A DNA stretch of 64,000 bases, taken from contig JBLDXI010000024.1 in NCBI GenBank assembly GCA_047495785.1, positions 3,596,001 to 3,660,000 on the forward strand. Reading direction: 5' to 3'. Position 1 is the stretch's first letter, and each line of letters begins with the position of its first letter. The position numbers and the translations under genes are program-made. Positions 20,089 through 64,000 of this stretch are shown here, piece after piece. A model generated the notes under the pieces. It did no database searches. It was not told the DNA's origin and worked only from the letters and a program-made list of their open reading frames with translations. This stretch comes from Lepidodermella squamata. Its lineage: Eukaryota; Animalia; Gastrotricha.

Positions 20089-20357
20089 AAAAATCAATGA
20101 AGACTGACTGAAACTATTTTAAAAACTTTTAAGTGCGCGACCTCGTTCAAAAATGAATTATTGTTTCAGCCTCGGTGATTCTTCGATTGATGAAAAAGAC
20201 GAATAATTGCTTAAATTTCTTTATTGCTTACTGATGTATTTTTTCCGTGCCAAACAAAACTTTTTTGAGGTAGAAAACCTTGTGTTGTGTAGGTTTTTGA
20301 GATGCGAAAGAAGATAATACTTGAGAATAAATTTTCTAGGTTTTTTCTGATATCAAA

Positions 20358-21023
20358 ATGTCGATTACTGCCTATAACGGTGGTTCGGTCCTTGCTATGG
20401 CTGGCAAGGATTGCGTCGCTATTGCTTGCGATAAAAGGTTTGATTGTGCACTGAAAAGAAAACATTTACAACTTCTCTCTATTTTTAGATTCGGCGTTCG
20501 TCTTCAGATGGTTTCGACTGAGTTTGAAAAGATTTTCCAAATGGGTCCGTCTTTGTTCCTCGGCCTGTCCGGTCTGACTACGGACATTCAAACTGTGTCG
20601 GAAAAGCTCAAATTCCGCGTCAATCTTTACGAAATGAAGGAAGGCCGTAAGGTTACGCCGAAAGTTTTCTTGACGATGCTTTCGAATTTGCTGTACGAGC
20701 GCCGCTTCGGCCCGTACTTTGTCGAGCCAGTCGTCGCTGGCTTGGACGAACACGGCAAGCCGTTCGTCGCCATGACCGATCTGATCGGAGATGCGATGAT
20801 CAACACTGATTTCACGCTGGCTGGCACTGCGTCCGAGCAGCTGTGGGGCATTTGCGAAACGCTGTGGAAACCCGATCTCGGCCCGGAGGACTTGTTCGAG
20901 ACTTGCGCCCAGTCGCTGTTGAACGCCATGGACCGTGACTGCTTGTCCGGCTGGGGTGCTGTCGTTTATTTGATTGAGAAGAACAAGGTCACGGTGAAGC
21001 ACATCAAGTCGCGAATGGATTAA
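20358..21023 (+). CDS. PSMB3: Proteasome subunit beta type-3
   Basis: MSITAYNGGSVLAMAGKDCVAIACD..RFG, LYERRFGPYFVEPVVAGL, DRDCLSGWG, C-terminal RMD. Removing the 51-nt intron 20438-20488 gives 204 aa. Confidence 0.97.
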   Translation: MSITAYNGGSVLAMAGKDCVAIACDKRFDCALKRKHLQLLSIFRFGVRLQMVSTEFEKIFQMGPSLFLGLSGLTTDIQTVSEKLKFRVNLYEMKEGRKVTPKVFLTMLSNLLYERRFGPYFVEPVVAGLDEHGKPFVAMTDLIGDAMINTDFTLAGTASEQLWGICETLWKPDLGPEDLFETCAQSLLNAMDRDCLSGWGAVVYLIEKNKVTVKHIKSRMD

Positions 21024-46649: not shown

Positions 46650-49600
46650 TCAGCGACAATTTTCACAATCGGATAGTGCTTCGTTTTTGCACTCATTATC
46701 GTTCGCCTTTCGCTTAGCTCTTATAAGCGCCATGGCGGCTCTCGCTTTCACCAAGCCTCGGCGTTGCTGGAGTTATTAGAAAGCAGGCAATTCAGTTACA
46801 TCGAATCATCTTGAAAATGTATGATCATACCTTGCTACCCCCTTTCGGTCGACCAGCCGGCCTATGCGGCCGTAATACCGGGTCCTTGCGCTTCTTGGCG
46901 GTTTTGACTTTCTCCGGAACGTTTTCAACATCGACGATAACCGATTCTTCTGTTGGATTGGGTATGACATCGTTCTCTTCTATACATACTTCGATCTCAG
47001 AAGTATTGATGCTCGGCGGAGGGGTTGGCGGTTGATTCCGTCTCTCTCGACAGCGCGCAAGTTCGGCTGTAACCAGCACTGCCCAATTTTCTGGGAACCC
47101 CTTCGATAACTGTTTTACAAATTCAGCACTAAATGTCCTGGACATTGCAGTGAGATTAGGCGGCCCAACCAGGCTCAGAATGGCTCCTGAGCCGGTGCCC
47201 ACGATAGTTTCCATGAAACGTTCGACAACAGGGCTCGATGTAACTGGGATGCAAGTTTTTATATTCACTCCAGCGATTAGGATTGAGGTCATTGGGATGT
47301 CGGGAACTAGATGCCAGCTGCGAACCAGCGCAGCTGGTGGCATTAAACTTTGATATGTAAAATCCTTATCGCCGTGATTCTAAAAATGTCAAAAAGAGAT
47401 GGAAAGGCAGAATGAAAAGAGAGATGAAAATTTTGTAACCAGATGCAATAAACATTCCTGCAATAAAATCCGCACCTCTTATTTGAATTGAGCTATATAT
47501 TGTAAAAAAACACTTGCTATAATCGAATTAAACATAAAAAAAGCTCCTTTTTATTTTTGTAATCTTCATGACATTGAGCAATAATAATCATCAACAAAGA
47601 TAGGTGGCGAGAATCCAGGAAATAAAACAGCCACAATTACTCATGGCCAATCATTTCCCAACATTTACTATGACGAACTAAGTGAGAAATCGCCATGAGG
47701 TAATTATGCCGAGAAGACATACGTAAAAATGCTGGAAATAGCGAAAAGACATCATAGCATAATTTATTGAATGAAAACATTCGGAATCACAAAAACCGGT
47801 ATTTGTGTGACCAGGAAGCCGCGAAATCGTCTCCAAGCATTTTCTCCCACAAGCGCCGACACATCTTCTTGCAGGCGTACATTGGAATATCGGGAATTAA
47901 ATGCCAGCTTCGAGGTATTAAATACTGCTAAATATCATACCTAGCACTGAGATTTAAAAATGCTGGAAAACGATATTTCAAAGATGATGAAAACCAACAA
48001 ATGCGCTTATTGAGAAAATAGTGCCGATATTATAAAGAAAGTTATGAAATTTCTGAGTAAAAATTTCACCTCGAAACATAGAAGATGGAAGCCTACTTTT
48101 CGACCTCAGGCGCTGCGTCCAAAGATGTATCAATAATTTCATTCGCAGGACTGTCATTTTGTAGCTCCTTTTCAGCTCTCTGGGACGGCTGGAAAAAATT
48201 AAAAAAAAGTTAGAAAATTAAATCCAGATTAGATAATAAGAACCTTAGCCTTGCTATCTTGGATTTTCCGTTTTCTGCTGCCTTTTCCACTATTATCACC
48301 AGCTTTCTCAACATTAGACTGAAAACAGTGAAAAATAATAGATCAGCAAGCAAAAAACATCCATTTGAGACCTTCTCCTGAATCAGCCACGTCGGTTTCC
48401 GAACCTGACCTGACATTTTGCCATCAGGGCTCGTCCTCGACACCCCTCGCTTGGTAATTTGCAGCCCGGTTTCTTCACTGGCCGCCTCATTTGCCTAGAT
48501 TATGGCAATTAACTTGAAATATGTAATAATTTGAGGTCGAAAGTTAAACCTTTTTGGGCCTGCCAGATCTTCTCACAGCAACGTTTCTAGCCGGGTTGGG
48601 ATTTTCAGTGTCATTGCTGTTTTCAACGGCTTGAACGGCTTCCCCGAGACTAGGTTCCGCCTGGGTGTTGACAGTTTCACACGTTTCTGGTTCAATAGTC
48701 AAGTCGAAGTGCTGAAATGAAATAGAATTTGCTGAAAATTAAAAAAAGACAACGCAATTCACAAACCTTCCTTGGCCGCCCTCGTCGTCTTTTGACTTCA
48801 GGCTTTGAAGAAACAGGTTGATTCTCGGTGAAACTGTTTTCGGGGTGATTCGTAGTTTGGTCGAGGCGATTTTCGGTTGTTTCCCCGTTTTCATCATTCC
48901 CCACCAATTGTGGCTCCGACTTGATTTCCACTTGAGACTAAAAAAAATATTCAACAGATTAGGATGCTCGAACGTTGAAACAGATTAAACAAATTGATAA
49001 GAAATTTCATCACCTCAGACCGCGCCTCAGGCTGAATCGGTGTTCTGCAGGCCCGCAGGCTTCGACGTCGAGGTGTCGTGTGCTGCTCAGCTTTTCGAGG
49101 CTTTTTCGCTGGAATTTCATGAAAGCACTCCGAATCAGTATCAGGCTCCGTTTTAACAGCTAGGTCTTCCTTAACCACGACGATTTCCGGCTCTTCAGCG
49201 CCTTCCAAGAGTTTCAGTAGCTTAGGATTGCGCGAAACTCTTCTCATCCATTTATCACGTAGATTGGCCGCACTTCGTTTGTGCAAAACGGGAAAGGCCG
49301 CTCGAATTTTATGCCACTGGCCCTCGGTACCGAACTTGTCGACGCCTGTTTTGAGAGCCGCAAATTCATCCAAGGACCATTTCTGCTTAGGTTTCTTTAT
49401 ATCAGCCTCTTCCAGGCCTTCGATTGAAAAATTCTTGTCCTTCTGCATACAAGCCCATTTAGCAGAGCACGAAGTGCTACTTCGATTTTTCAAAACATCG
49501 TACGCTTCGATGATAGGCTGCCAAAACGGCCCCTTGAAGCGAACATAGCCGTCTTTAAGCGCTTGTAGTTCCTCATCAGTCCACGGCAGCGGTATCTTTG

Positions 49601-52600
49601 TATTGGCCACGGCTGACGATTCGTTCAATTTATGATTAAGCTGACTTTGCAGAGCTTCGTCATTAGCAATGCGTTTCCATGTTGCTCTGATCTGAGAGCG
49701 ATTGAGTTTTTGCAGAACAGGATAAGCAGCGTGCATCTTGGCTATTTCACCGAGTCCATACTTGTCAACGCCTTCTTTAATCGCGAGCAATTCCTCACGA
49801 GTTCTAAACTGGTATTTTCTGCCAGTAGTCGGCGCTGACGTTGGCGCAGGTGAACCAGACTCAACAGGTTCGGGCGATAGCAACGAAACAGAATTCGGTT
49901 GAGTATCAGTTGCCTAAAACAGAAAGCAATAATAAATGAGATTAATTATGGCCGATTAATAAACAACTTTCAGCGATTTTTAAATATTGGCTTTCCAAGC
50001 ATGTTTGACTTTTATATAAAAGCATACATCTTGCACATGCTCCGAGTCTTTTCAAGTTTTCATGTCTCACTAGAAACAGGGACAACTTCCTTAAACTATC
50101 AGTGACCTCTTGAAAACGGTGCTAAAAATGCCCAGCACAGCAAAATTTTGTCAATAAATCGGCACATTGGACAAATTGGCCCGATCCAATGTTGATCGGG
50201 CCGCCAAGCTCTCGAAAGAGCCAGGCATTTATTTTTCTATTGGCTGTCACCCGAAAAAGCGGGGCTTCTCCGAAAATGTAATCAAGGAAATTGTTGAAAA
50301 GAAAGAAATCACGAATATAATTGCAATCGGCGAATGTGGATGCCAGCGAGGGCACTGACACTTTAAAAAATCAAATACCACTTTTCGAAATGCAAGTCCT
50401 GTACGCAAAAACTACTAACTTGCCTCTATGCAACACTTTCGGTAAGAGATGAGTCGTTTTATGAGCTGAATAGCGAGCGTTTAGGTATTATGAGTCTTAT
50501 TTCAGAGACGTTCCTCAAGATGACTGTTTTCGCCACGTCCGAGCTCCCAATTTCCAGAACAATTCTGTCCTCCACCACTTGAATGGCTCGCTAACAGCAA
50601 CCGAAAATTGGCCGAAAATAAGCGACAACAGGTTTGAACGCTGGCTCATTTGGCGGCCGATACGCGCAGCACACCCAAGACGCTGTTAAAAACACAGAAT
50701 CGACATCGACAACGACGACGAGATGGATTAATGGACCTCTGGTGCGCATTTCGACTCCGCGTTGGTCAATGAGCGCCCCAACAAAACCTTGGCTGTGAGC
50801 CTCATTATTCGTGGTATGATAAGAATGTTAGTGCCGACGTAAAAAATGCTCGTGATTAAGTTCTCTCTTCCTTTGCTCCAACTCAAGGAACCACTGGCTA
50901 GATAGCGGATGTAGTGAACATCTCCCTCACGGAAAAAAAATTCGCTAGTGGCCGCAGCCTGGTAAGAATTTGATTTTGGGGTCGCCAAGGGTTAGGTGTG
51001 GAAAATCCCTGCAGTAAACTGTCAGCCAGAGGCTTAACTTTGTTTACTATATTACCACACAGTTCGCCAATAATCTCCTCGAGTCATTCCAGCGCCCTTT
51101 GCCAGAATCCACTGTTTTCATTTTTATTTTTATTTTCACTTTTGCAATCGTTCTATTTTTTTGATTATGCTTCATGGTTCTGGCCTGTTTAGCTACTGTA
51201 TTTTAATCCTCTGTAAAACATTTCGTATATTCATAACATTTGTTTGTTGCTTGCTTTAACACTTGCTAATACTTACTTTTAAAATTGCTCATTTTCTTTT
51301 AAAAGGAGGAAGTGTTGTAGTACGGCCTGGCACGCGACTAGCGTCATTCATTCTTGGAATTTACTCGTATTCTCATGGTCGCGTGCCAGGCAACCTTCCC
51401 CGCCTTTTTACAATTTATAACGCTCGTTTTAAATTCACGAAATCGGCTCAATAAAAAGTTAATTCATTCACACGCCTTTTGTAAAACATACTACAAGCTG
51501 CTTTACCTCCTGGTCAAACCGCTGTTCACAAATCCTCGAAGCGGCGACACAGCTGCTTATCCGCCTGGCAGTTGAACCATCCTAGGCGACACCAAAGAAA
51601 AAGACCACAACCGTAACCGACGGTTCTGCTCGGAAACCCGCGAAGCTGCGGTACTCGAAACCAGCGCCGATATCTCAGGAATTCATCTCCGAGTCGTCCG
51701 ACAAAGAAGTCCAACAACCGGTTGGGCTTCTGCCCCTTCACCTAGATCTTTCCAATTCTTCTGAGACTTCAGAATCTTCTGAATCTGACTATAACTTGTT
51801 TCATGCCTTTGCATGTGCTGGACGCTGGAAATGTGATTTCATAAATTTGATGATTCATTTAGTTCGTTCACCGTGATCATCACCGTGACCTGTCCGACAG
51901 GGTGTGTACACCGGAGTGATTTTTATTCACAGCACACGTTTTTGTTGTTTTTCTACAGTTCTTTTCTACTGTTCTTTTAATCTCAAAAGTGCTGACGAAT
52001 AAAGAAAATGTTATGTTATGTTATGTTATGTTCAGTTCGTTGATGATTCCTACATGCGAAAAAATCATCTGCATGTTTCTTGTATGTATATACTTCAATA
52101 TTTCAATTATTAATTCTCACTACGTATCACTATTAGCTTCGGTCAAGAATTGTAGTTGGTAATTTTGGATTTAAAACTTTGAAAAATAGATTCCATAAGA
52201 TCTTCCGAAGGTCTCTCTTTGGCCATCATTCAGTTGGCCGATGAAGTTGTAATAAAAATGGCACCGATAGACACCTTAACTGATCGGACTTCAAATGTAA
52301 CGGCGGGCTTCGACGACTTTGACATATGAGTAAAATCTTCCGTGCAAAACGCTTAGCGTCGAATCGGTAATTTCCTGGCAGTCCTCGACCGTTTTTGCAG
52401 ATTTCTTCAGTTTCAGGTTTACTCCGCTATACGGCGGTGATGGTTAATCAGGTATAACTCAGGTTGGTGTATTCCTGAACTATCTCAGGCTTTTCTTATT
52501 AGTGTCATAGAGAAAAAAATGACCAGAGTAAGCACTCAAGCTACAATTTTGATCTTCATTATTATAGAATTGCTTTCTCAAAACGTATATCTCCGTTTTT

Positions 52601-54473
52601 CACCAAATTTTGCATGCCTATAGAGCGCGAGCTGCTCTTTCACGTGGTATAAGATTTGAGGTGGGCGATTGCTGCTCAGTCTTGATCTCATCAAAATAAA
52701 TGAAACCATAGTGAAAACGAGGTTTTTGTATCGTAACAACGGTTGGGTTGCCCACGTCGAATCTTATACCACATGAAAGAGCAGCTCGCGTTCTATAGAC
52801 ATGCAAAATTTGGTGAAAAACGGATATATACGTTTTGAGAAAGTCAACAATGAATAAAAATGAAGATTTAGAAATTTTAGCTTGAGTGCTTACTCTGGTC
52901 ATTTTCTTCTCTATGCTTAGTGTTAATCATACCTGATTAGAGCACCAGTAACTGAAGTAGTGAACATTAATTTCCAACCAGTTTTTTAGCAGCAGGGAAT
53001 GATTTTAAACATGACCATCGTATTCTGCGGCCTTTGTTTGACCATTAAATTTTTGATTCCAGAAAAATTGGCTGAAAATTGACCACGTTTGCAGTTTAGG
53101 ACGAAAAATAGAAATGCGTTGCATAATTGAGGCAATTGCCCGTAATTACAAAACCGGTGGCGCGATTGTTTGCGACAGGTGTTGCGCCACAATGGTGAGC
53201 TTTTAAAAGATTTCCTTTTGGGGCTATTTAGTTCAATACCCAATGCACCTGCTGGCAAAGGAAGAGCTCTCTATGACCGAGGGCCTTCGATATCGATGGC
53301 TTCAAAAATCAGTGAAAAGTTTTTTGCTAAATTGGGTCACTTTACCCTATATTTGAAACCCATGTCAATTTTTGAGAAATTCAACCAAACAGGTAAAATT
53401 GCCACTAGCTTATTTTACAGCAAAAACAATCTTACTTGAGCGGAACCAACGATTTCCACATATTTCTGTTCCTGTTCGACTGCAATCGAACTGTTTGCCG
53501 AGCCGCACTTTGCCTCTTTATCAAGCATTTTCAGAAGCGCTGGATATCGATTCATACGCGCCCATGCCCGCTTGAAATCATCGCGAGTTCGTTTTAGCAA
53601 AACCGGGAAAGCCGCTCGAATTTCAGCCCAGCCTTCCTCGCCAAACTGCTCGACGCCTTTTTTGATCGCAGCATATTCTTCGATTGACCAACCGAATTTC
53701 CACAGATGTTTGGATTTTTTCATTTTTTCTTCGGACTTTCCATCATGGCGTTTTCTGTCCCCTGGTGTTAGCTGGAAAAAAATTCGTTCAATTTCCATGA
53801 AAAAGCTCAATTGTTTGATTAAAATGTCAACATGCGGGAAATTTTCAATTACCTTTGATTTTTCCTGGCGTTCTTTACTTCCTTCTGCTGAATCTAAATC
53901 GGTCCACTCAGCTGAGTCAGTGTTAGAATCGTCAGAAACTCTTTCATCTCCAGACTCCCCGTCGGATTCTTGATCAGATGCAGCTATGCCAACAGCTTCA
54001 GCAGCCCGCTTTTTCTCAATCAAATCAGGTTCTTTCAGCAGCCTGTACCATGTATTTTTGACACTGCCGTACGTTCGACCTTTCAAACAGTCATAGGCGT
54101 CTATGACTTTTTGCCAGTAGCCACCGTTGAACCGAGCGTGGCCGTCTATAATAGCCTGCATTTCTTCGCTAGTCCAAGGCTTATGAACTCGAACCTCGAA
54201 GTCTTCTTTAGGGGCTTGCTCGACGCCACTTTTCAGTCGATTCTTAATCGCTTTTGCTAGCGGATTATCTTGATTGCGGATCCTATGCCAGGCATATCTC
54301 AGGTCGTTGTCCTTACGACTCTTCAGCAGTGGATAGGCTGATCGAATCTCGTCCCATGCTCCCGCGCCGTATTTTTCGACGCCTTTTTTGACAGCAGCAT
54401 ATTCCGCAAGGGTCCAACGCGACAGCCAAAGAACTTTCGTTTTGGGATTCCTCTTCTTCTTGCTGTCGTCCGG
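46650..54473 (-). CDS. Multi-Myb (6x TRF/telobox-like SANT-Myb) + AT-hook protein, paralog 1; 5' end unresolved
   Basis: Phase-0 exons 54473-53853, 53771-53436, 49913-49014, 48937-48767, 48711-48550, 48494-48372, 48318-48244, 48188-48105 (weak donor), 47379-46831, 46766-46650. Myb consensus e.g. WSLDEFAALKTGVDKFG..QWHKIRAAFPVLHKRSAANLRDKW. AT-hooks RRRGRPRK and RRSGRPKK. The 53436-to-49913 join is inferred from phase. Confidence 0.75.
50167..50450 (+). pseudogene. TatD-family nuclease fragment inside Myb-gene intron
   Basis: PGIYFSIGCHP and IIAIGECG motifs, followed by a stop/frameshift and LFEMQVLYAKTTNLPL. Confidence 0.75.
51301..51495 (+). mobile_element. Putative polypurine tract plus short 3' LTR remnant
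   Basis: AAAAGGAGGAAG directly precedes TGTTGTAGTA; the inverted terminus TACTACA ends at 51495; internal TTTATAA and AATAAA. Confidence 0.5.
52008..52032. repeat. (TTATG)n microsatellite
   Basis: About five tandem copies of TTATG. Confidence 0.85.
52506..52915. mobile_element. Foldback MITE with ~165-bp TIRs, hAT-like
   Basis: Arms start CATAGAGAA(A/G)AAAATGACCAGAGTAAGCACTCAAGCTA and are near-perfectly complementary. Flanks ATTAGTGT / CTTAGTGT form a 7/8 match to an 8-bp TSD. Confidence 0.85.
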
Positions 54474-55230
54474 CTAAAAAGTAATATTATTATTGAATTA
54501 GATATTCATTTGAAATCATAATAATTTTAATACGGAACCAAAATCAAGGGAACATTTTCATGTAATGGAGTCTTTTGAAAATTCTTCGTTCAATTCCTCT
54601 TTCAATGTGTCTAGAACGTGTACTGCTTGTCTCTTCACCGATATTGATTATTCAGTATTTTCTTTCGACGCTCAACTTTGCCGGGCATATTGGTGCCGCG
54701 GTATGCTTCCTCATTAGTAACTACTTTTAGCGATCGCATTTTTCCTAACGAATACTTCGAGAGCAGGGTGTGCTTTTCGCTGCTTTTAGAAGATGTTCGG
54801 GCTGCTATAGATACCGTCTGCTCGCATGCGGCGAGTTCTTTTTACCTCAATTACCCGCGATTATGGCAATAGTGTCTTTTTCTTTACAAACTGAGAGCAC
54901 AAATGAAGTGAATACGGCTTGTAAAAATGTAAAAAAAAGAATAAAAGTCGAAATCTGCATCGTCCCGTTTAGGGTTTTGCCAGAAAAGACGCTAGTTTCG
55001 CGAAAGACGCCGACATGAGGGTGCGGAAAAACTTCGATGAATATGCCCTAAACATCGATACCGCCTACATCATCCTATTCCAGGTTAATCAACAAATTCA
55101 TTGTACTTGCAAGATATGGGTCGCTTTCGCCGAGCTGAAGTCAACCACCGCCAGCTTAAAAAAACGGCTACTATCGCGGAAGTCGTAGCAAGCAGCCTCG
55201 CGAACTAGAATCATCTTGCCTCAGAAACAA

Positions 55231-55389
55231 ATACTCGTAATTGGCCACGCAGCTTATCCCTGCCCAGTAAAAGCTAACAACGTCAAGCCGGATTACTCTA
55301 ATCTCCCCGTCACCTGGCGTAGCAACAAGAACGCATGGATGAAAAGCGACATTTTCGAAGAGTGGCTACACGACTTTCTGAAAGCGTAA
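55231..55389 (+). mobile_element. pogo/Tigger DDE_1 transposase fragment
   Basis: Translates to ILVIGHAAYP..LPVTWRSNKNAWMKSDIFEEWLHDF. Confidence 0.85.
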
Positions 55390-55442
55390 AATTTCGCTTC
55401 TTCCTTAGCATTTTTTGCACGGTTCAGCAAGCTACGCCTCAG

Positions 55443-55950
55443 AGCACCAGGTGAAGATGGTATTCTCGATCCGCTGATTAAAAATGGGCCACCTGCCCTT
55501 CTTGACCCTCTTCTGCTACTTTTTGATTATAGCCTTAGCATACAGGGTTTGTTCCAAATGCCTGGGAAGTTGCCGTAGTGGTCCCTGTCCCGAAAGCCGG
55601 CAAGTCAGCGCAGTCGGTCGATGAGTACCGCCCGGTGTCGCTGCTTTCGTGCGTCGCGAAGCGTCGGTGTGATGGATGCCGTCATCGCGGCGTATCTGCT
55701 CGACTTCTGCATCCAGCACGGCAAGTTTCCGGCCAGCCAGGTCGGGTTTCAGCAGCTGAGGTCCGTACTGGATGCACGATTGGTGCACGATGTCTGCGAG
55801 GGGCGCTCCGACACAGGCGAGGAAACTGGGAAGACTGGTGACAGCATTTCTCGACTACCGCGCGGCCTATGATAGCGTGTGGCACAACGGCCTCCGACTC
55901 GCCCTTGAAGGGCTCCGCTAGCCTGTACCTGTTATCCGCTGGTGCTCGGA
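55443..55950 (+). mobile_element. Degenerate non-LTR (LINE) reverse transcriptase fragment
   Basis: APGEDGI, VVPVPKAGK..YRPVSLLSCVAK, QVGF and AFLDYRAAYDSVWHNGL across frameshifts. Confidence 0.9.
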
Positions 55951-56084
55951 GTGTGGCTGCGTGGCTGTCTACCGCGTGTGAAGGCTGGGTCGCAGCTGAA
56001 TGAGCCCAATGCGACTATGGCGGCGCGCAAGGTTCGCCCTTATCCCAATTCTGGTCATTATATTGAACCTTGAGAAGTTCGGAT

Positions 56085-56272
56085 TTCCTGATCCGGTCAA
56101 AGACGCCGGAAAACCCGGCCACTACTTGAAAGCGGCTGATCGGTGGGAACAAGACGCGGCACCAGAGGCCGACTACCCTTACCCGACTGAAAGATGCCGA
56201 TTGTGTAGCTACACCTTTCAGGCTTCCAAGGTTGATGCGATACGCCACAACGCCATCAACCAACCACCCTGA
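56085..56272 (+). mobile_element. Possible BED-like zinc-finger fragment of a DNA transposon
   Basis: CRLCSYTFQASKVDAIRH pattern among other TE debris; the second His is absent. Confidence 0.3.
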
Positions 56273-56643
56273 ACGCCTCCTCTCGCTCATCAAAAATAAG
56301 AAAAAAGTTCGTTGAATTACCACCGGTTTCCATCTCCTTCTAATCTACCGTTTGAAAAAATTCCCGGTGAATTTATCACTGAATTAATTAAAAAATATGA
56401 ATTCATTTTATTTTAAATTTATGTAATAAAATTTATGTAATAAAATGCATAATTTTTTGTTTCCAAGGATACATAATGTTTTTTGTGAATTAAATTAACG
56501 CGATTTTGCTTTTCGGGAAGTGACGAAAGCCTCGTCAAATTCTGAGGGGTCAGTACTTAAAACGTAATTGCTATGCCCATCGAAAAGGATTCTCGATAAC
56601 AATGATCAGTATGCCAATTAACAATGCCAATAGTCAATCATTA

Positions 56644-56987
56644 ATAATCGATAATCGATAATCGATAATCAGCCAAGGAAATTCCAGTGAAAAGAGAGCA
56701 GCTTCTTTATAAATGATGATAATGAAGTCTTTGTGATGGCGTTAATGCCATGAAAGGAAAATAGAAGGTTATTGAGTTGAAAGCCTATACCAATCACCAA
56801 TCGACAGCAATAATATCGATAGTCACATCCGATTTTCCATTCAGTAGGCATCACTCACTTTAGTAGGAAATATGAAGGTTGATAGCAGAACAATGACAAC
56901 AAATGAATCATTGCGGTTATCCACACCATCGCCATACGCCTGTATAATGATTGATTTGTTAGAATCGATAATCGATAATCGATAATC
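56644..56987. repeat. Two short (ATCGATA)n arrays
   Basis: Three to four copies at ~56644-56670 and about three at ~56965-56987. Confidence 0.7.
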
Positions 56988-57335
56988 ATTGTATGCAGAA
57001 CACTTGTACATGTCAGGCATCACGTCAGGAGTAGTCTGGAGGCTCTAATCAACGCTCTGGAGCTATCTGGAGTATACGGTACACGATGTGTCACGTCGTG
57101 GCTTGACGGGACCCGACGGTACACACCGTGCCACATTGTGCCACGCACTTTGAAATCGACGTGACCCCTTACTGCCCGCCGAAGTCTAGCCGGACGATAA
57201 CTGCCCCCCCCCTGACCACATTATCACCGAGACCTGACCACCAAAATTTATAGGCGAATGAGTGGCGATCAAGATCATTGCAGTCTTTTTAACCAAGTTA
57301 TATTTTCAAAATATCATTCGTGAATTTAGCCATAC

Positions 57336-60300
57336 CTTTTTAGGAAAAGCCTTTCCTCGTATTGGTCGCGGAAACTTCGGATGGTTTTCAAGCCAACTTC
57401 CACGGCTTGATTGGTCATCACTCGTATTTTGTAGCCGAACAATTTGAGGCGTCGTGGATGTGCTATCACGCTCGCGAATTTTAGAAGTTTTTCTCTTCTT
57501 CTTTCGCAGCCTGAAAAGTATCATAAATTTTTGAATTTCCGTAATTTTCAAAGTTTTTGATCAGTCTTACTCGGCTTCCTTTTCTTCATAAGCTCTGCAT
57601 TCTCGAAATATCTCTTTTTCCAACTCGTTATCTGTTTCAGGAGAAGGCGGTTGCTTTTCCCGCATATCACGACAGCGAGCCAGCTCTTCTTTCACGAGAT
57701 CCAGCCAATTTTCAGGAAATCCCTTCGAAAATTGAGCGATAAACTCGGAACTGAAGACTTTTGACATGACAGCACCATTTGATGGGCCGATCAAGTTGAG
57801 AATAGACCCGGAGCCTGTTTTGACAGACGTCTCAGATAGCCGTTCCATAATCGGACTCGAAGTGATAGCGATGCGAGTTTTCGAGTTGAGCCCAGCGACC
57901 AAGATCGAGGTCATGGGGTAATCTGGGACTAAATGCCAGTTGAGAATCGTCACAGCTGACATTGTCGAGGCTTCTTCATACAAAAAAAACCTAAAATGTT
58001 GAAGAAAAAATTGTTCATTCGGCTCCTCTAAACATGCTCCTTAAAAGTATCGGAAGTCGGATTTACTATTTTATGATTTCACAGCTTTTATTTCAAATAT
58101 TATGATTTAAACAAGCAAATACGCTTGCATGGTAAATAGTGCCGATGTAAAGCTATTAACAAATTATTTGAGCAACAATCCACTATGAGAAATAGGAAAC
58201 GGGGCAGAATACGGTGATGTATCAATGATTTTATTTGCACAATCAATGTGACTCGAATTTCCAGGTTTCTCCTTAGCCATCAGCTTTTTCCACATTAGCC
58301 TAGAAAAATGACAAACGATTATATAGCAAGCAAAAGCAAAAATATTATACTTTATTATTGTTCAGCCAAACAGGCTTTCGAATTTGGGATGGCTTTTTGC
58401 GATTAGAGCTTGCTCTATACAGACCAAAGCCTAGATCGGAAAGCGGTCTCCGTCTCTTGAGCGCTTTCTTCCCCTATGATGACGACAGTCAAAAAATGGA
58501 TACAATTTTAGGTGAAACATCATACTTTTATAGGCCTGATGCGTCGTTTCACAGCAACTCGTTTAGGAGGATTCGACTTTTCGATTGGATCGCTGTCTTC
58601 CGCCTGCACAGCTTTCTTGGGAGTCTTTTCGGCCGGTGTATTGACGATTTCATACATTTCTGGTTCATCGGTCGAGTTGAAGTACTAAAATGGGAATAAA
58701 AAATTATTTTCTCCCAAATTCTAAAATTATAATAACATTTGTATATCCATCAAAAAATATGGTATGTGTCCTGCACTAGAATAGGTAACGAAGCGAACCC
58801 CGTCAAAGGTATTTCGCAAGAATAATTTCGCTATTTAGTTTGTCTCGTAATTTATCGTTTTCTTTATTTCTGCAACATTGGCATGAATTGTTGCAATTTT
58901 ATTTTTTCAAGGCTATATTCAGTCAAGACCAGGCGCAGGTGGTAAGAAATGAGACTCGTAAATAGAAGGCGAAGTTTCCGTTAATTTTTCCGGCTATTTT
59001 GGACATTCAGCAGCAAATACAGCGCCATCAACGCCCCACTTTGAGCATGGTTTCAAGTGATTCGTAGCCAAGGCGTAGATTTCGGCGACGATATTCTGAA
59101 AGAGCGCGCTAATCGTTTTAGCTGTAATTTTGACCAGCCAAACACGGAAAACCAATTTACTTTATTATTTTCAAGTTAATTGATAAAAAATGTTCAACTC
59201 TGCATGTAACGAACTTTTTTCGTGGCACCATACTGGTTCGTTATAAACGGAATGCACTGTACTCAAACACAGGTTCACATATGAATTTATTCCCGACTTT
59301 CGACTAATACGCGTGGTATTCTATTCCAACCTCGTGTTTGGCTTTTCCTCAAGAAACTAGCTAGAATTTTCGCCCAAATTTCCTTAATATAATTTCGATG
59401 AAATGCGCAGCTTGATTTAGACCAAAACCGAACAACCTCAGCAAAAGAAATTGAACAGCACTTAGCGGCTGAAACGATGGTTTGTGGATTGCGTCAAAAG
59501 CCAGGCTGCCTTTCATTCTACTCGTAAGAGAACGCGCTCAGGATCGCTGATCCTGATCGGATCGCTGATTCCCTGGTTGAATGGAAGAGTTGAGCGCTCA
59601 ATTCTACTGGGTGTTGCATATATGTTTGCCAGGGGTCCACAGCAATAACTTAGCAAGCGATGACCGTGAGCCATAGCTCATTCGATAGATAATTGATTCA
59701 CAATCTTTTTGAGACCAAACACACGACCGCCTTCCTGCAGCCGGGCATTCTGGTCTACCCGGACTTCTCTCGCGCGTTCAAGGTGATGTGTGACGCCTCG
59801 GGCGTCGGCTTGGGCTGCATGCTCATGCAGACTAGCGATGACGGACTCGACCGGCTGGTCGCCGCTCACAGCCGCCTGCTTTCGCCCGCCGAGCGGAGGT
59901 ACCCAGCCCTGGAGAAAGAGTGCCTCGCGATATTGTTTTCGTGCGACCGCTTCAGAGAATACCTGCTTGGCACCAGGTTCGTCATGGCACCAGCCGACTC
60001 ATTTCGCCTCGACCCGGCTGAGCTCCGTGCCGCTCAGCTTGACGATCCCGACCTCGGACCCGTCCTACGTCACCTCGACCTGGGCGAAGCTCTGCCTCAG
60101 CCGCTCTCCGCCGCATCTGCCTGTCTTTTGCGCCTCCGCCACGCTGTCTCAAAGGACGAAGCCGGCGTGTTCCACATGTCGGTGGAGGACCGGCTCTTCC
60201 CTCGGCTTTGTCTCATCTTTCCGCTGTCCATGTGCCGCAGGTGATCCGCGTCGCTCATGACGCGCCCTCATCTGGTCACCTCGGTCGGTTCAAGACGTTG

Positions 60301-63300
60301 GGGAGGATATGGTACTATTTTGGTGTACGGCTACCCGGCCATGTTTCTTGACAGTTTCTGATGACAAGTTTCTTGAATGTTTCGAAAAGTTGAAAAGCTA
60401 CAGCTTTCGCACCTGAAGACCGCACCTGACTCGACATCGACAGCTACGTTCACAATCGAAAATCGCCAAAGCGTGGAGACCATTGGCAAGGTGAAACATT
60501 GTCCTAAGGTTTATTATGAAAACATTCGTAAAATCGCTGGAAAACATCGATCGCGAATTGTTAGTTTCGACTTCACTTACAATGACTTGGAGGAGGTTGA
60601 GAAGTTTACAGATGGCGAACTGAAAGATAGGCCCGTTGTCGTTCTGGCACAACATCAAAGTGATGCCATGACCAAGGGTCTGGTCCTGATATTTTCCCAA
60701 ACAGAAGAAGAAGCCCAGGCGTGGCAGGGTGAGCACTCAACGGTTCCTCTCGGTTCAACATCGTCGTTCGTCGTCAACAAAATTATATTCTCCCGAAGAA
60801 GCAGATGTCAGGCCTAAATGGTCCATTATTAAGCGCCTCGATTGGCGATATGACTGGCACAAGCGCCAGTGGTTCCGCAAAGTCGTTAACATCAACTCGT
60901 ACAACGAAGCTGAGGGTTCTATACAGATCACTGGTTTATCGACCTGTTGCCCTCATTCCGGGATTCATGTCCCTCATTCATGTCAGGTGAAGACGCAGGC
61001 AATGGATCCAAAAGAAGTTCTCTTGGCAATGATGCTGCTACTGAGGCGAAGATAATCAACTTAGGGTTTCATCATTTATAGTTATAATATAGGTATCGCT
61101 TTTTATTATATTGTTTATGATTTCCACGGAAGTGCCAATTGACCCAGAAAGAAATTATGGGCATGGGAGTCGTTGCATACCTCGAGGCAGTGATCACTGT
61201 ACACCTGCTACCAGAGCGTACCAAAATCTTACTGAAAACAGACATCGCTCTCTTACTTACTCGAAGAATATGTAAGTCTGATAACAAATTATTTCTCGAA
61301 ATGTTATTCAAATGTTCGAAAAATCAATAATGAAAAGCTATTTAACAAAATAATTCATTACCTTATATAATAACTCAGGTTGAATCCGCGGTTTGGAGAC
61401 TCTCTGGCTTCTTCGTTGAGGTGCCTGGTGTTGCTTCGATTTCAGCGGCTTTTCTGCTTTTTTCACAGTAGAGCACTCCGAGTGACTTTCAGAATCCGCA
61501 TTTTGGTTTTCTTCAGCTACAGTAACCACTTCGGACTCTTTGGTATCTTCCAAAAGTTTCAATAGCTTGGAATTGCGCGAAAATGCTTTCCATCTGTCTC
61601 TTAAAGCATGTGCACTTCGGTTTTGAAAAATAGGGTAGGTCGCTCGAATTTTACGCCAACTCGCACCAAACTTGTCGACACCTTTCTTGAGAGCCACAAT
61701 TTCATCCATTGACCAAGTTATCAGTTTAACAGCATTTTTGACGTCAGCCGGGGCCAGGCCGTTGATAGAAAAATTATTGTTCCTAAGCATTGAAGCCCAT
61801 TGACCAGCGCACTGAATGGCCGTTCGATTTTTCAAAACATCGTACGCTTTGATTATTCGCTTCCAAAGCGGCCCCTTAAAGCGAAAATAGCCGTCTTTAA
61901 GCGCTTGTCGCTCCTCATCAGTCCACAGCACGTATCGAGACTTATTGTCTACGGATGCCATGTCGTTCATTTTATCTTTATCAGGCAATGTTACAGGAGA
62001 GCACTCCGAGTGACTCTCTGAATCAGCGTTCCGGCTGTCTTTGGCTACAGTAACCACTTCGGGCTCTTTAGTGCCTTGCAGAAGCTTCAATAGCTTCGGA
62101 TTTCGCGAGAATCCTTTCCTCCATCTTTCTTTTAAGGCTTTCGTACTTCGTTTTTGCAAAACAGGGTAGGCCGCTCGAATCTTTTGCCATTGGCGCCACG
62201 CACCATACTTGTCAATGCCCATTTTGAGAGCGACAATTTCATCCATGGACCAAGTTCTCAATTTAACAGCTTTTCTGACGTCAGCCGGAGCAGTGCCGTT
62301 GATTGAAAAACTAGAGTCTCTCAGCATAATATCCCACTGAGCACTGCACGAACCAATGCTTCGATTTTTCAAAACATCGTACGTTTCGATAATTCGCTGC
62401 CAAAAGGGCCCCTTGAAGTGAGAATAGCCATCTTTAAGCGCTTGTCGCTCCTCGTCAGTCCACGACACGTTTCGAGTCTTATTGTCTACGGATGACATAT
62501 TGCTGATCTCATCTTCATTAGGCAATGTTTCAGGAGAGCACTCCAAGTCACTCCCTTGGTAATTTCTTTTACAGTCATCCTTTACCGCAACCACTTCAGG
62601 CTCTTCAGCGCCTTCTACAACCTTTAGCAGCTCGGAATCGCGAGAAATTATTGTCCTCCATTTGTCATATAGACTTTGAGCACTTCGATAGTGCAAAATG
62701 GGATATGCCTCTCGAATCTTTTCCCACTGGCCCTGTGAACCGAACTTGTCCACGCCTTTTTTGAGAGTCACAATTTCACCCATGGACCATCTTTTGGTTT
62801 TTTCGATACCAGCCGCTGCCAGGCCTTCGATTGAAACGTTAGCGTCCTTTGACATTTTTGACCATTGATCAGAGCATTGCTTCCAACTTCGATTTTTCAA
62901 AACATCATACTCTTCAATGATTCGGTGCCAAAATGGCCCCTTGAAGCGAATATAGCCATCTTTTAGCGCCTGTCGTTGCTCATCAGTCCACGGCACGAGT
63001 CCCATCATAGACGCTACGGCTGATGAGTTGTCAAATTTACCATTAAGCAGGCTTTGTAGAGTTTCACTGTCAGAAATGCGTCTCCACACTGCTCTGATCT
63101 GTGAGCTATCGAGTTTTTGCAGAACAGGGTATGCAGCTTGAATTTTGGCTATTTCACGGAGTCCATACTTGTCAACGCCTTCCTTAATCGCGAGCAATTC
63201 CTCGAGTGTTCTCCTCGTTTTGCCAGTGTGGGGGGTTGATGTAGGCTTCACAGACTTCGCAGGCTCGGGCGAAACCAACGCACACGAATTCGTTAGAGCG

Positions 63301-63308
63301 TCATTTGT
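57336..63308 (-). CDS. Multi-Myb (7x TRF/telobox-like) protein, paralog 2; first exon not identified, 3' exons apparently disrupted
   Basis: Large phase-0 exon 63308-61362 with 1+3x2 Myb repeats. Exon 58684-58526 is paralogous to 48711-48550, and the WHLVPDYPMTSIL exon (~57990-57570) is paralogous to 47379-46831. In-frame TAA at 58273-58275 follows a small deletion relative to paralog 1. Confidence 0.75.
59205..59259 (-). mobile_element. Solo Tigger/pogo-type terminal repeat
   Basis: Minus strand reads TA|CAGTGCATTCCGTTTATAACGAAC with an internal inverted AACGAAC/GTTCGTT; no partner end found. Confidence 0.5.
59725..60312 (+). mobile_element. Ty3/Gypsy pol fragment (RNase H and start of integrase Zn finger), internally deleted
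   Basis: LVYPDFSRAFKVMCDASGVGLGCMLMQ..SRLLSPAERRYPALEKECLAI..FREYLLGTRF, then LRAAQLDDPDL, then frameshifted AHDAPSSGHLGRFKT. GC content jumps relative to the flanks. Confidence 0.93.
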
Positions 63309-64000
63309 CTAGAACAGAAATATACCAAGTGAGCAAAAATGATAGATTATTTGAATTTGCAAATGAATGAGGATGAACGTGGACAGTCGTCAAGGTCTCA
63401 GATTTTCGGATGCACCTCCGGTGAGTTTTTTTGATTACTCTTGTCGTCAATATTTAGGCTCGAGAAGCCAAGAGTTCCTGTTTTCCAAAACTCTAGGTCA
63501 AAATTAGCTCTTTCGCGCTGAACTGTATCATTGAAACCGTCTCAACGTGTTCCCGAGTGAACCTTGCGCTAATAAATCATCGCCTTTGAATAAAAAATTG
63601 AATAAAAAAATTCTTGATCTTCTAAATCTTTCTATGTTAAACGACGTTCGTTAATCAAATTTTGTGTAGAACTGATGAAATTATGTAAAAAAGAGCGAAG
63701 CATTTCCTTAATAAGCACACAACTTTTCCCCTTTTGCGTCAAATTTGTAAAAATGATTATGATGCGCCCTAACTTGACTCTTAATGAATTACTTAATGAC
63801 TTAATTCTGGACGACCCTCTCTACAGGCGGCGCTGGATCATCAAAAATCGGCGGCCTTTTCGCATTCTACGTCACGAGCATCTGACCCACCTACAAATCC
63901 TCTTACGAAGCGAGAGCCTTGTGATTGATATAATTAGAAATGTCGGATGTCGGATGTAGGATGTAGGAAGTCGAAAATGTCGGATGGAGTCCACCCAGCA

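What the first reader, a model, noticed from the sequence alone, without database searches (positions are those of the whole stretch)
46650..63308. Tandem telobox-type Myb arrays with hypervariable recognition helices in a TE-rich locus: a possible zinc-finger-array analogue
Seen: two paralogs with 6 and 7 Myb domains. Within one repeat class, helices 1-2 are nearly invariant (WTDEERQALKDGY.RFKGPFW.RII..YDVLKNR) while helix 3 changes in every copy (SWKQCSDQW, SIGSCSAQW, TAIQCAGQW, SSTSCSAKW). The second class behaves the same way (SAQSLYDKW, STKALKERW, SAHALRDRW, SAANLRDKW). Paralog 1 also has AT-hooks, and both share a C-terminal WHLVPD-x-PMTSIL domain. Introns and the intergenic space are packed with Gypsy, LINE, pogo and hAT-like debris. 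Established: helix 3 is the base-contacting helix, and the pattern resembles the TRF1/2 telobox (LKDRWR). TRFs have one Myb, fungal Tay1/Teb1 two, and nematode TEBP-1/2 three Myb-like domains. Inference: a modular, rapidly retargeted DNA-reading family (telomere, satellite or TE recognition), conceptually like KRAB-ZFP/PRDM9 arrays but built from Myb domains.
Basis: partly seen in the sequence, partly recalled or inferred. Interest (0 to 1): 0.82.

Follow-up and report, generated by a model that had tools for sequence, protein, structure and literature searches.

The report
KNL2-like genes with Myb arrays
This stretch of a small invertebrate's genome holds tandem copies of a centromere-licensing-type gene (KNL2/M18BP1 family), each starting with a SANTA domain and followed by unusually long chains of 6 to 10 DNA-binding Myb domains; the family normally carries one Myb domain, so these may read DNA sequence, but that is untested.

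Summary
The Myb arrays are real (Pfam E 1e-30). They fall into three classes (c, a, b), and the gene is transcribed and spliced. The shared 'WHLVPD' domain is SANTA (PF09133), the hallmark of KNL2/M18BP1.

The spliced RNA contigs I was shown reach a stop codon about 280 nt upstream of the SANTA exon. Every SANTA ORF opens with an ATG and ends its second exon at a phase-0 donor. Every Myb exon opens at a phase-0 acceptor and has no early ATG. SANTA-first models give two intact ORFs with GT-AG at every junction:
- gene alpha: 1236 aa, 10 Mybs, starts outside the window
- gene beta: 1023 aa, 6 Mybs plus 2 AT-hooks
- gene gamma: a short SANTA plus AT-hook gene

Class b is TRF/telobox-like, with best solved-structure hits to TRF1/TRF2. 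Young class-a copies have lost the basic c-Myb-type helix-3 residue. Helices 1-2 are under strong purifying selection (omega about 0.2). Exposed helix-3 codons run at about the neutral rate (omega 0.8-1.5, CI includes 1). The repeats are old (dS 0.46-0.84) and the family is confined to three loci.

ZNF-like rapid retargeting is therefore not shown. This is a new variant of the KNL2 family.

The parts
61362..63308 (-). Gene alpha, large Myb exon of 649 codons. Order of domains is c, a, b, a, b, a, b: c 63066-63209, a1 62844-62990, b1 62637-62789, a2 62313-62462, b2 62100-62252, a3 61776-61925, b3 61572-61715.
   Evidence: Pfam Myb E 1.2e-30. HMM map. RNA contigs of run X2 cover it, with a joint at 61362/58684. 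AG acceptor sits before 63308 and the exon opens in phase 0.
58685..61361 (-). Gene alpha intron of 2677 nt (GT..AG) that holds an LTR-retrotransposon remnant (RT_RNaseH, 59693-60241 on the + strand).
   Evidence: Joint in an RNA contig, with ends CT..AC on the + strand. Pfam RT_RNaseH_2 E 2.8e-25. DNA depth is raised over 59600-60400.
58526..58684 (-). Gene alpha tail exon. It is homologous to beta's second AT-hook exon, but the hook is degenerate (KRRIRP).
   Evidence: RNA joints 58684 and 58525/58473. Sequence read directly.
58351..58473 (-). Gene alpha basic tail exon that ends in the conserved RKPVWL motif.
   Evidence: RNA joints. Sequence. The homologous exon in beta is at 48372-48494.
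58273..58299 (-). Gene alpha last coding piece: 8 codons, then TAA at 58273-58275. AATAAA follows, and the RNA contig runs on to 58145.
   Evidence: RNA contig 11 spans 58350-58472 and 58145-58298. Frame checked.
57571..57962 (-). Gene beta exon 1: ATG at 57960-57962, then the SANTA domain.
   Evidence: Pfam SANTA E 1.3e-14. RNA contig with a joint at 57570/57509. An ATG sits 5-10 codons before the domain in all copies.
57336..57510 (-). Gene beta exon 2: basic stretch that ends at a phase-0 donor AAG|GTATGG.
   Evidence: RNA joint 57509/57570. Sequence. The homologous donor is kept in copies C and B.
53436..54473 (-). Gene beta exons B' (inferred). Three older-type Myb domains (b-like 54273-54416, a-like 54033-54176, b-like 53544-53690), with a 60-nt in-frame GT..AG intron at 53772-53831.
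   Evidence: HMM map. Open frame of 352 codons, with AG before 54473 and GT after 53436. No RNA evidence was obtained for this exon.
49014..49913 (-). Gene beta Myb exon B of 300 codons: c 49656-49802, a 49434-49583, b 49227-49379.
   Evidence: Pfam Myb E 1.4e-10. HMM map. Two loose ends of X2 RNA contigs match it exactly at 49797 and 49172.
48767..48937 (-). Gene beta AT-hook exon 1 (KRRRGRPRK).
   Evidence: Sequence and GT-AG borders.
48550..48711 (-). Gene beta AT-hook exon 2 (RRSGRPKK).
   Evidence: Sequence and GT-AG borders.
48093..48494 (-). Gene beta three tail exons (48372-48494, 48244-48318, 48093-48188). Stop TAG is at 48093-48095, about 750 nt upstream of the next SANTA ATG.
   Evidence: Sequence. 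The joined frame is open from ATG to stop, 1023 codons, with GT-AG at all nine introns.
46825..47343 (-). Gene gamma: ATG at 47341-47343, SANTA domain, acidic spacer, one AT-hook (RPAGRPKGG), then a stop. No Myb domain lies downstream.
   Evidence: Pfam SANTA E 1.5e-9. ORF with an ATG start. The Myb HMM finds nothing below 49227.
55216..55386 (+). pogo/Tigger-type DDE_1 transposase fragment inside the inferred first long intron of gene beta.
   Evidence: Pfam DDE_1 E 2.5e-9.

Best explanation
The stretch is part of a tandem cluster of lineage-specific paralogs of the KNL2/M18BP1 (SANTA plus Myb) family. All lie on the minus strand of contig C24.

Architecture:
- Each gene starts with an ATG followed at once by a SANTA domain, then a short basic exon.
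- Alpha and beta continue with a chain of Myb domains made of c-a-b triplets and a-b pairs. Each ends in a basic tail, which carries AT-hooks in beta and a degenerate one in alpha.
- Alpha has 10 Mybs and 1236 aa. Its first three exons lie just beyond the window.
- Beta has 6 Mybs, 2 AT-hooks and 1023 aa.
- Gamma is SANTA plus one AT-hook.

How the arrays grew: the whole c-a-b exon was duplicated, and an a-b module of about 180 aa was duplicated internally.

Inferred mechanism (not shown): the TRF-like b domains and the AT-hooks give multivalent binding to repeated DNA. That binding tethers the SANTA module, and whatever it recruits (CENP-A loading partners in known family members), to that DNA.

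Exposed helix-3 residues drift at about the neutral rate, while the domain scaffold is strongly conserved.
For: Domains:
- SANTA and Myb by Pfam.
- AlphaFold gives two three-helix bundles for an a-b unit, pLDDT 84-93 and 77-88. Single domains superpose on TRF1/TRF2/Tbf1 at 0.8-2.0 A.

Transcription and splicing:
- Four GT..AG joints in contigs of run X2. These are absent from the DNA run X1.

SANTA-first order:
- The spliced RNA contigs shown for the 7-Myb exon reach a stop at 58273-58275, and no RNA contig covers 58000-58144.
- Gene beta's array likewise ends at TAG 48093-48095, about 750 nt before the next SANTA.
- Every SANTA ORF has an ATG 5-10 codons before the domain.
- Myb exons start at acceptors, have no early ATG, and are conserved from their first codons.
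- Only about 130 nt separate the donor after SANTA copy C from the acceptor of the first Myb exon of alpha.
- Both SANTA-first models are open from ATG to stop with GT-AG throughout.
- The same order is seen in the genome's canonical-type gene on C54, in a metagenomic relative, in mollusc M18BP1-like proteins, and in C. elegans KNL-2, where SANTA is aa 2-113 (PMC11537844).

Family size:
- 9 SANTA hits, and Myb a-b hits only next to them.

Selection:
- omega 0.15-0.24 in helices 1-2, against 0.8-1.5 at exposed helix-3 codons.
Against: - The splice from the exon after SANTA (donor at 57335) into B' (54473) or B (49913) was not observed. I had one read-laying run, and it covered only 57400-63399.
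- The link from SANTA copy C into alpha rests on geometry and frame, not on a read.
- RNA contig depths differ: SANTA contigs 29-45, alpha Myb exons about 21, beta Myb fragments about 9. SANTA-only short transcripts may therefore exist, or paralog k-mers may be collapsed.
- No functional data of any kind exist.
- The Myb domains here are TRF/c-Myb-like, and unlike the acidic SANT domain of mollusc M18BP1-like proteins. Homology of the Myb part to the family's SANT domain is therefore not established.
- The CENP-C cupin family was not detected in the genome (weak negative).
Confidence: 0.6

Rival explanations
1. Each gene is a Myb array first with a C-terminal 'WHLVPD' domain. The arrays form a rapidly retargeted DNA-reading family under diversifying selection at helix 3, analogous to KRAB-ZFP/PRDM9.
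For: - Helix 3 differs in every copy while helices 1-2 are nearly fixed.
- Class-a exposed helix-3 dN (0.86) is twice the linker dN (0.39) and exceeds the global dS (0.59).
- Class-b variation falls on positions that align with TRF helix 3.
- The depth of the SANTA_A contig (29) is nearer to that of the alpha Myb exons (21) than to the beta fragments (9).
Against: - A stop codon lies in the spliced RNA before the SANTA exon. A direct splice from exon 58351 to the acceptor at 57991 would be out of frame.
- Omega's confidence interval includes 1, and omega is 0.78 against local dS.
- Repeats are old, dS 0.46-0.84, with no homogenisation.
- Only three loci in 121 Mb.
- No relatives turned up in the metagenome scan, so turnover between species cannot be shown.
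Confidence: 0.15
2. Relaxed-constraint reading. The young class-a domains no longer contact DNA through helix 3. They act as SANT-like protein- or histone-binding scaffolds, and helix-3 change is neutral drift with no change of target.
For: - Older class-a copies (C24:3771-3775k, C54, B') keep a c-Myb-like Q-C-R..W helix 3. The five young copies replace the R by S or A and carry almost no basic residues there.
- Omega is about 1, as expected for unconstrained surface positions.
- Helices 1-2 and the NPKLLK tail are the conserved surfaces, with omega 0.08-0.24.
Against: - Class b keeps the telobox-like L-[KR]-[DE]-[KR]-W core.
- The whole domains remain net basic.
- Class-a helix-3 dN exceeds that of the presumably unconstrained linkers.
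Confidence: 0.3
3. Telomere or interstitial-TTAGGG binding proteins (TRF/TEBP/Tay1-like function) that merely happen to carry SANTA, with no role at centromeres.
For: - The best solved-structure relatives of class b are TRF1/TRF2/Terfa.
- The genome's telomeric repeat is TTAGGG, and many short internal TTAGGG blocks exist.
Against: - No TRFH or other shelterin-type domain appears in any exon.
- SANTA is otherwise known from KNL2/M18BP1 proteins.
- The positions aligned with TRF helix-3 residues differ between copies.
Confidence: 0.15
4. SANTA-only genes and Myb-only genes alternate as separate, perhaps co-transcribed, units. The proteins are never fused.
For: - Each SANTA ORF has its own ATG.
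- Gene gamma is a SANTA-only ORF that stops one codon after the conserved donor position.
- SANTA contigs have higher depth than Myb contigs.
Against: - Myb exons have no start codon before their conserved first domain, and they begin at acceptors.
- There is no room for a separate first exon in the 130 nt before alpha's first Myb exon.
- Frames are compatible in both genes.
Confidence: 0.15

Closest known systems
KNL-2 / M18BP1 (Mis18-binding protein 1), the CENP-A loading or licensing factor
   Same: - The SANTA domain (PF09133) sits at the very N-terminus, with Myb-type domain(s) downstream and a long disordered basic region.
- The nearest database relatives of the SANTA domain are annotated mis18-binding protein 1-like.
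- C. elegans KNL-2 has SANTA at aa 2-113 and Myb at aa 623-673 (PMC11537844).
   Different: - Known members carry one SANT/Myb domain. These carry 6 and 10, plus AT-hooks.
- The Myb domains are TRF/c-Myb-like, not the acidic SANT type seen in mollusc M18BP1-like proteins.
- Several paralogs sit in tandem.
- SANTA identity to any database protein is at most 36%.
TRF1/TRF2/Tbf1 telobox Myb domains
   Same: - Class-b domains align to TRF helix 3, with an L-[KR]-[DE]-[KR]-W core, at E about 1e-5.
- They superpose at 0.8-2 A.
   Different: - TRFs have a single C-terminal Myb and a TRFH dimerisation domain. No TRFH is present here.
- The domains here are chained and alternate with a second class.
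- The residues aligned with TRF helix 3 vary between copies.
Multi-Myb proteins: c-Myb R1R2R3, SNAPc4 (4.5 repeats), fungal Tay1/Teb1 (2), nematode TEBP-1/2 (3).
   Same: - Tandem three-helix Myb domains.
- The two-domain a-b model resembles R2R3 pairs in Foldseek ranking (Trichomonas Myb2, c-Myb R2R3; weak E).
   Different: - None of these carries SANTA.
- 10 domains in one chain exceeds all of those listed.
- No sequence comparison with TEBP or Tay1 was possible with the tools at hand.
KRAB-ZFP / PRDM9 zinc-finger arrays
   Same: - Modular chain of small DNA-binding domains.
- The scaffold is conserved while the recognition helix varies.
   Different: - Repeats here are old (dS 0.46-0.84).
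- Positive selection is not demonstrated.
- There are three loci rather than hundreds.
- The only repeat-number variation observed is between paralogs.

Membership tests
KNL2/M18BP1 | SANTA domain present | tested here: met
   PF09133 at E 1.3e-14 (57570-57983) and 1.5e-9 (46828-47343), both above the curated cut-off.
KNL2/M18BP1 | SANTA lies N-terminal of the Myb/SANT domain in one polypeptide | tested here: inconclusive
   - Supported by the stop codons before each SANTA, ATG starts, splice phases, and intact joined ORFs.
- Also supported by the same order in relatives.
- The joining splice itself was not seen in reads.
KNL2/M18BP1 | Myb/SANT domain homologous to the family's own | tested here: inconclusive
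   - Pfam Myb is met.
- The same a and b types occur in the genome's canonical-type C54 gene and in a metagenomic relative.
- They look unlike the SANT domain of mollusc M18BP1-like proteins.
KNL2/M18BP1 | Needed for CENP-A deposition, with centromere localisation | not testable with these tools
   No functional data. The Yippee/Mis18 family has 2 genomic hits, and the CENP-C cupin has none. Neither result is decisive.
TRF / telobox proteins | Telobox-type helix 3 in the Myb domain | tested here: met
   Met for class b only. phmmer hits to Terfa, TRF2 and TRF1 at E 1.4e-5 to 9e-4, with alignments through helix 3. Class a and class c do not show it.
TRF / telobox proteins | TRFH dimerisation domain with a single C-terminal Myb | tested here: not met
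   No TRFH or other family besides Myb and SANTA in any exon. There are 6-10 Mybs per chain.
TRF / telobox proteins | Binds the telomeric repeat | not testable with these tools
   The genome's repeat is TTAGGG. Binding is untested.
ZNF-array-like rapidly evolving DNA readers | Excess of nonsynonymous change (omega above 1) at recognition positions | tested here: inconclusive
   Class-a exposed helix 3 has omega 1.46 against global dS (bootstrap CI 0.91-2.36) and 0.78 against local dS. Class b is about 1.0. Only five repeat copies were available.
ZNF-array-like rapidly evolving DNA readers | Young, homogenised or rapidly turning-over repeats, and a large family | tested here: not met
   Pairwise dS between a-b units is 0.46-0.84. 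Hits are confined to three loci.
AT-hook proteins | GRP core flanked by basic residues | tested here: met
   RGRPRK and SGRPKK in gene beta and AGRPKG in gene gamma, read directly. The homologous site in alpha is degenerate.

The most novel reading that the evidence does not exclude
A KNL2-derived gene family in which the centromere-licensing SANTA module is aimed by long chains of TRF-like Myb domains. Centromere (or neocentromere or telomere-adjacent) identity in this animal would then be partly read from DNA sequence. The paralogs, with their freely changing recognition helices, would track different or changing satellite repeats. That would be a Myb-based counterpart of sequence-directed CENP-A deposition and a substrate for centromere drive.
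Probability: 0.15. Interest if true: 0.85.

Novelty: new variant of a known kind. Interest (0 to 1): 0.58.

Why it matters
KNL2/M18BP1 is the factor that tells cells where to lay down new CENP-A. In the animals studied so far, it finds centromeres through proteins and chromatin marks, not through DNA sequence.

A version with 6-10 TRF-type DNA-binding domains plus AT-hooks, present as several expressed paralogs, would be a natural experiment. It joins the licensing module to a sequence reader. If these proteins bind specific repeats, they offer a direct test of whether centromere specification can become sequence-directed in a metazoan. They would also allow a test of whether centromere proteins and satellites co-evolve.

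If they do not bind specific repeats, they still extend the known architectures of the family. They also provide one of the longest Myb chains described.

Tried and rejected
- **Word-index search, 646-aa Myb exon:** no hit at E 1e-3.
- **Exhaustive representative search with SANTA:** only 43 distant hits, best 34% identity, and no self-hit. The species and its close kin are not in the library.
- **Metagenome scan with the a-b alignment:** no relative.
- **ESM Atlas look-alikes of the beta Myb exon:** generic Myb clusters only, scores at or below 0.83.
- **Foldseek against PDB:** no match at E 1e-3. Only the expected small Myb domains turned up.
- **Organism tests:** nematode SL1 and TTAGGC searches were negative. 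The short TTTTCAG-type introns therefore do not mean a rhabditid nematode.
- **Loose-end 30-mer:** genome search found nothing, because it was a mixed consensus of two contigs. It was later explained by the end of the upstream Myb exon.
- **Context of P0002:** SANTA with no recorded Myb; uninformative.
- **Pfam on 15 further ORFs in the introns:** no LINE or hAT.
- **Literature:** three searches found no description of SANTA with Myb arrays.
- **Rejected, pseudogenes:** the frames are intact, omega is 0.2 in the scaffold, and the genes are transcribed.
- **Rejected, gene conversion as the cause of helix-1/2 identity:** dS there is 0.58, the same as elsewhere.
- They were not sent to any search or folding tool. 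Searches were done exon by exon, by reference.

Full report
**What is there**

The window is G000:C24:3596001-3660000 of a 121-Mb eukaryotic assembly. Between 46.8 and 63.3 kb, all coding pieces of interest lie on the minus strand.

- Pfam finds six Myb_DNA-binding stretches in the 646-aa ORF 61341-63278 (E 1.2e-30). It finds more in 48954-49883 and 53418-54161.
- A Myb HMM built from the copies maps 7 domains at 61572-63209, 3 at 49227-49802 and 3 at 53544-54416.
- The quoted motifs are all present.
- An AlphaFold model of one a-b unit gives two three-helix bundles (pLDDT 84-93 and 77-88). The variable residues lie on the third helix.

**Organism**

The organism is coded.
- DGAT1 in the same window is 55-59% identical to vertebrate, mollusc and annelid proteins, so it is a metazoan.
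- Introns seen in RNA are 51-60 nt.
- The telomere repeat is TTAGGG.
- Nematode SL1 and TTAGGC are absent.
I did not test this.

**Expression and splicing**

Run X2 holds 43% of the sampled words of 57400-63399. Its contigs skip four GT..AG introns that the DNA run X1 does not skip: 61361/58685, 58524/58473, 58349/58299 and 57569/57510. It is therefore RNA.

X2 differs from the window by only two substitutions and one 9-nt in-frame deletion across the Myb exon. It is the same or a very close strain. Two loose ends of X2 contigs match the second gene's Myb exon exactly, at 49797 and 49172. That exon is therefore expressed too.

**Gene models**

Following the RNA chain from the 7-Myb exon (63308 to 61362) through 58684-58526 and 58473-58351 into 58299, the frame stops after eight codons (TAA 58273-58275). 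AATAAA follows, the contig ends at 58145, and no RNA contig covers 58000-58144. A direct splice from 58351 to the acceptor at 57991 would be out of frame. The SANTA exon downstream is therefore not the C-terminus of this protein.

The second array likewise ends at TAG 48093-48095, about 750 nt before the next SANTA ORF.

Several features point to SANTA coming first:
- Each SANTA ORF has an ATG 5-10 codons before the domain.
- The exon after SANTA ends at a conserved phase-0 donor. Paralog similarity stops at that point.
- Every Myb exon begins at a phase-0 acceptor and has no ATG before its conserved first domain.
- The acceptor at 63308 is joined in RNA to a sequence that matches the end of a paralogous 3-Myb exon lying 0.8 kb upstream, outside the window (C24:3660125-3661015).
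- That exon's own acceptor lies only about 130 nt after the donor that follows SANTA copy C.

Joined in a script only, the SANTA-first models are open from ATG to stop with GT-AG at every junction:
- alpha: 7 exons, 1236 aa, SANTA plus 10 Mybs
- beta: 10 exons, 1023 aa, SANTA plus 6 Mybs plus 2 AT-hooks

Gamma (47343-46825) is SANTA plus one AT-hook. The joined proteins were not searched or folded.

The same order, SANTA then Myb, holds elsewhere:
- in a canonical-type gene of this genome on C54, with SANTA, a long disordered middle and four C-terminal Mybs
- in a further cluster member upstream of the window
- in a metagenomic relative, where a 141-aa SANTA ORF is followed 290 nt later by a 1354-aa ORF with at least five Mybs of the same types
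- in mollusc M18BP1-like proteins
- in C. elegans KNL-2, with SANTA at aa 2-113 and Myb at aa 623-673 (PMC11537844)

What I could not show is the read that joins 57336 to 54473 or 49913. Contig depths also differ between SANTA and Myb pieces. I put the SANTA-first fusion at about 0.7-0.75.

**Family size**

SANTA gives 9 hits in the genome:
- four in this cluster (C24:3.643-3.671 Mb)
- one at C24:3.775 Mb
- one on C54
- three without nearby Mybs

The a-b unit hits only the cluster, C24:3.771-3.775 Mb and C54. Outside the genome, the SANTA domain has only 43 distant hits, best 34% identity. The named ones are mis18-binding protein 1-like or uncharacterised. No relative of the a-b unit turned up in JGI metagenome contigs.

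**Domain classes**

A tree separates class a from classes b and c. It pairs A1 with the upstream exon's unit, and A2 with A3, for both a and b. Whole a-b modules and whole c-a-b exons were therefore duplicated.

- Class b is TRF/telobox-like. Best PDB matches are Terfa, TRF2 and TRF1 (E 1.4e-5 to 9e-4). Single-domain superpositions are 0.8-2.0 A.
- Class a in older copies carries a c-Myb-like Q-C-R..W helix 3. The five young copies replaced the R by S or A and have almost no basic residue there.
- The SANT domain of mollusc M18BP1-like proteins looks different: it has an acidic helix 3.

**Rates**

Estimates are Nei-Gojobori on five a-b units and three c units.

| Region | dN | omega |
|---|---|---|
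| Class a, helices 1-2 | 0.11 | 0.18 |
| Class a, exposed helix-3 codons | 0.86 | 0.78 against local dS; 1.46 against global dS (bootstrap CI 0.91-2.36) |
| Class a, core C, W, M | invariant | - |
| Linker | 0.39 | 0.67 |
| Class b, helices 1-2 | - | 0.36 |
| Class b, exposed helix 3 | - | about 1.0 |
| Class c, helices 1-2 | - | 0.15 |
| Class c, helix 3 | - | 0.39 |

Pairwise dS is 0.46-0.84, with a global value of 0.59.

- dS in the invariant helices equals the global value. Their identity therefore reflects purifying selection, not conversion.
- The helix-3 rate is indistinguishable from neutral.
- The repeats are old.

**Reading**

Shown:
- domain content
- transcription and splicing of alpha
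- termination before SANTA
- family distribution
- rate heterogeneity

Inferred:
- the SANTA-first fusion
- multivalent DNA binding by b domains and AT-hooks
- tethering of a SANTA-dependent activity to repeated DNA

Open rivals are neutral decay of class-a DNA contact, a telomeric role, and separate SANTA and Myb proteins. Literature searches found no description of SANTA with Myb arrays.

An earlier first-reader note on the adjoining window (s1-421494) independently called this a KNL2/Mis18BP1 cluster joined to telobox-like Myb repeats. My Pfam result agrees with it.

**Verdict**

This is a new variant of the KNL2/M18BP1 family. Interest is moderate to high.

Noticed in passing
L011/L017 (G000:C24:3771100-3775600, + strand): Four successive Myb exon units hold 10 Myb domains in all (2, 2, 3 and 3 domains). 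Each starts at an acceptor-like site and each ends in its own stop codon. A SANTA ORF with its own ATG follows. No SANTA was found in the 6 kb upstream. They could be alternative terminal exons or stacked partial duplicates.
   Followed up: partly
L012/L018 (G000:C54:2233348-2237354, + strand): Canonical-type KNL2-like gene: SANTA exon, several acidic or disordered exons, then one 384-codon exon with four Myb domains of the a and b types that runs to the stop. It is probably the conserved orthologue from which the cluster arose.
   Followed up: partly
L010/L016 (G000:C24:3662186-3671156, - strand): A further cluster member upstream of the window: SANTA copy D with an ATG, about 7 kb of Ser/acidic/basic low-complexity exons, then three Myb domains just before SANTA copy C.
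   Followed up: partly
whole genome (e.g. G000:C13:394-669; C9:16961-17044; C2:1173501): TTAGGG is the terminal repeat, seen at a contig start. There are also 752 matches of a 24-mer, many in short blocks far from contig ends. These are possible targets for TRF-like Myb domains.
   Followed up: no
window 62305-62313: RNA run X2 lacks 9 nt in frame, just after the second class-a domain of gene alpha. This is an indel difference between strains in a linker.
   Followed up: no
window 58351-58380 and 48372-48400: The tail motif [VI]RKP[TV]WL is conserved between alpha and beta at the end of a basic exon. From memory it faintly recalls CENP-C-type motifs of some KNL2 proteins. I did not test this.
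   Followed up: no
window 57977-57979: An out-of-frame upstream ATG (short uORF) lies 15 nt before the SANTA start codon of gene beta.
   Followed up: no
window 50167-50355 (+): A TatD_DNase fragment (Pfam E 1e-6) lies inside the inferred long intron of gene beta. It is probably a gene fragment carried by repeat debris.
   Followed up: no
L014/L020 and L015/L021 (G000:C45:921568-921864; C59:41725-42021): Two SANTA-only ORFs are identical over the part inspected. One lies near a contig end. They are probably haplotigs or a very recent duplicate.
   Followed up: no
window 18661-21023 (+): DGAT1 (475 aa) is encoded in a single uninterrupted ORF, and an ORF that looks like a proteasome beta-type subunit (not scanned) lies next to it. 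Housekeeping genes here are intron-poor, unlike the TE-laden introns of the Myb genes.
   Followed up: partly
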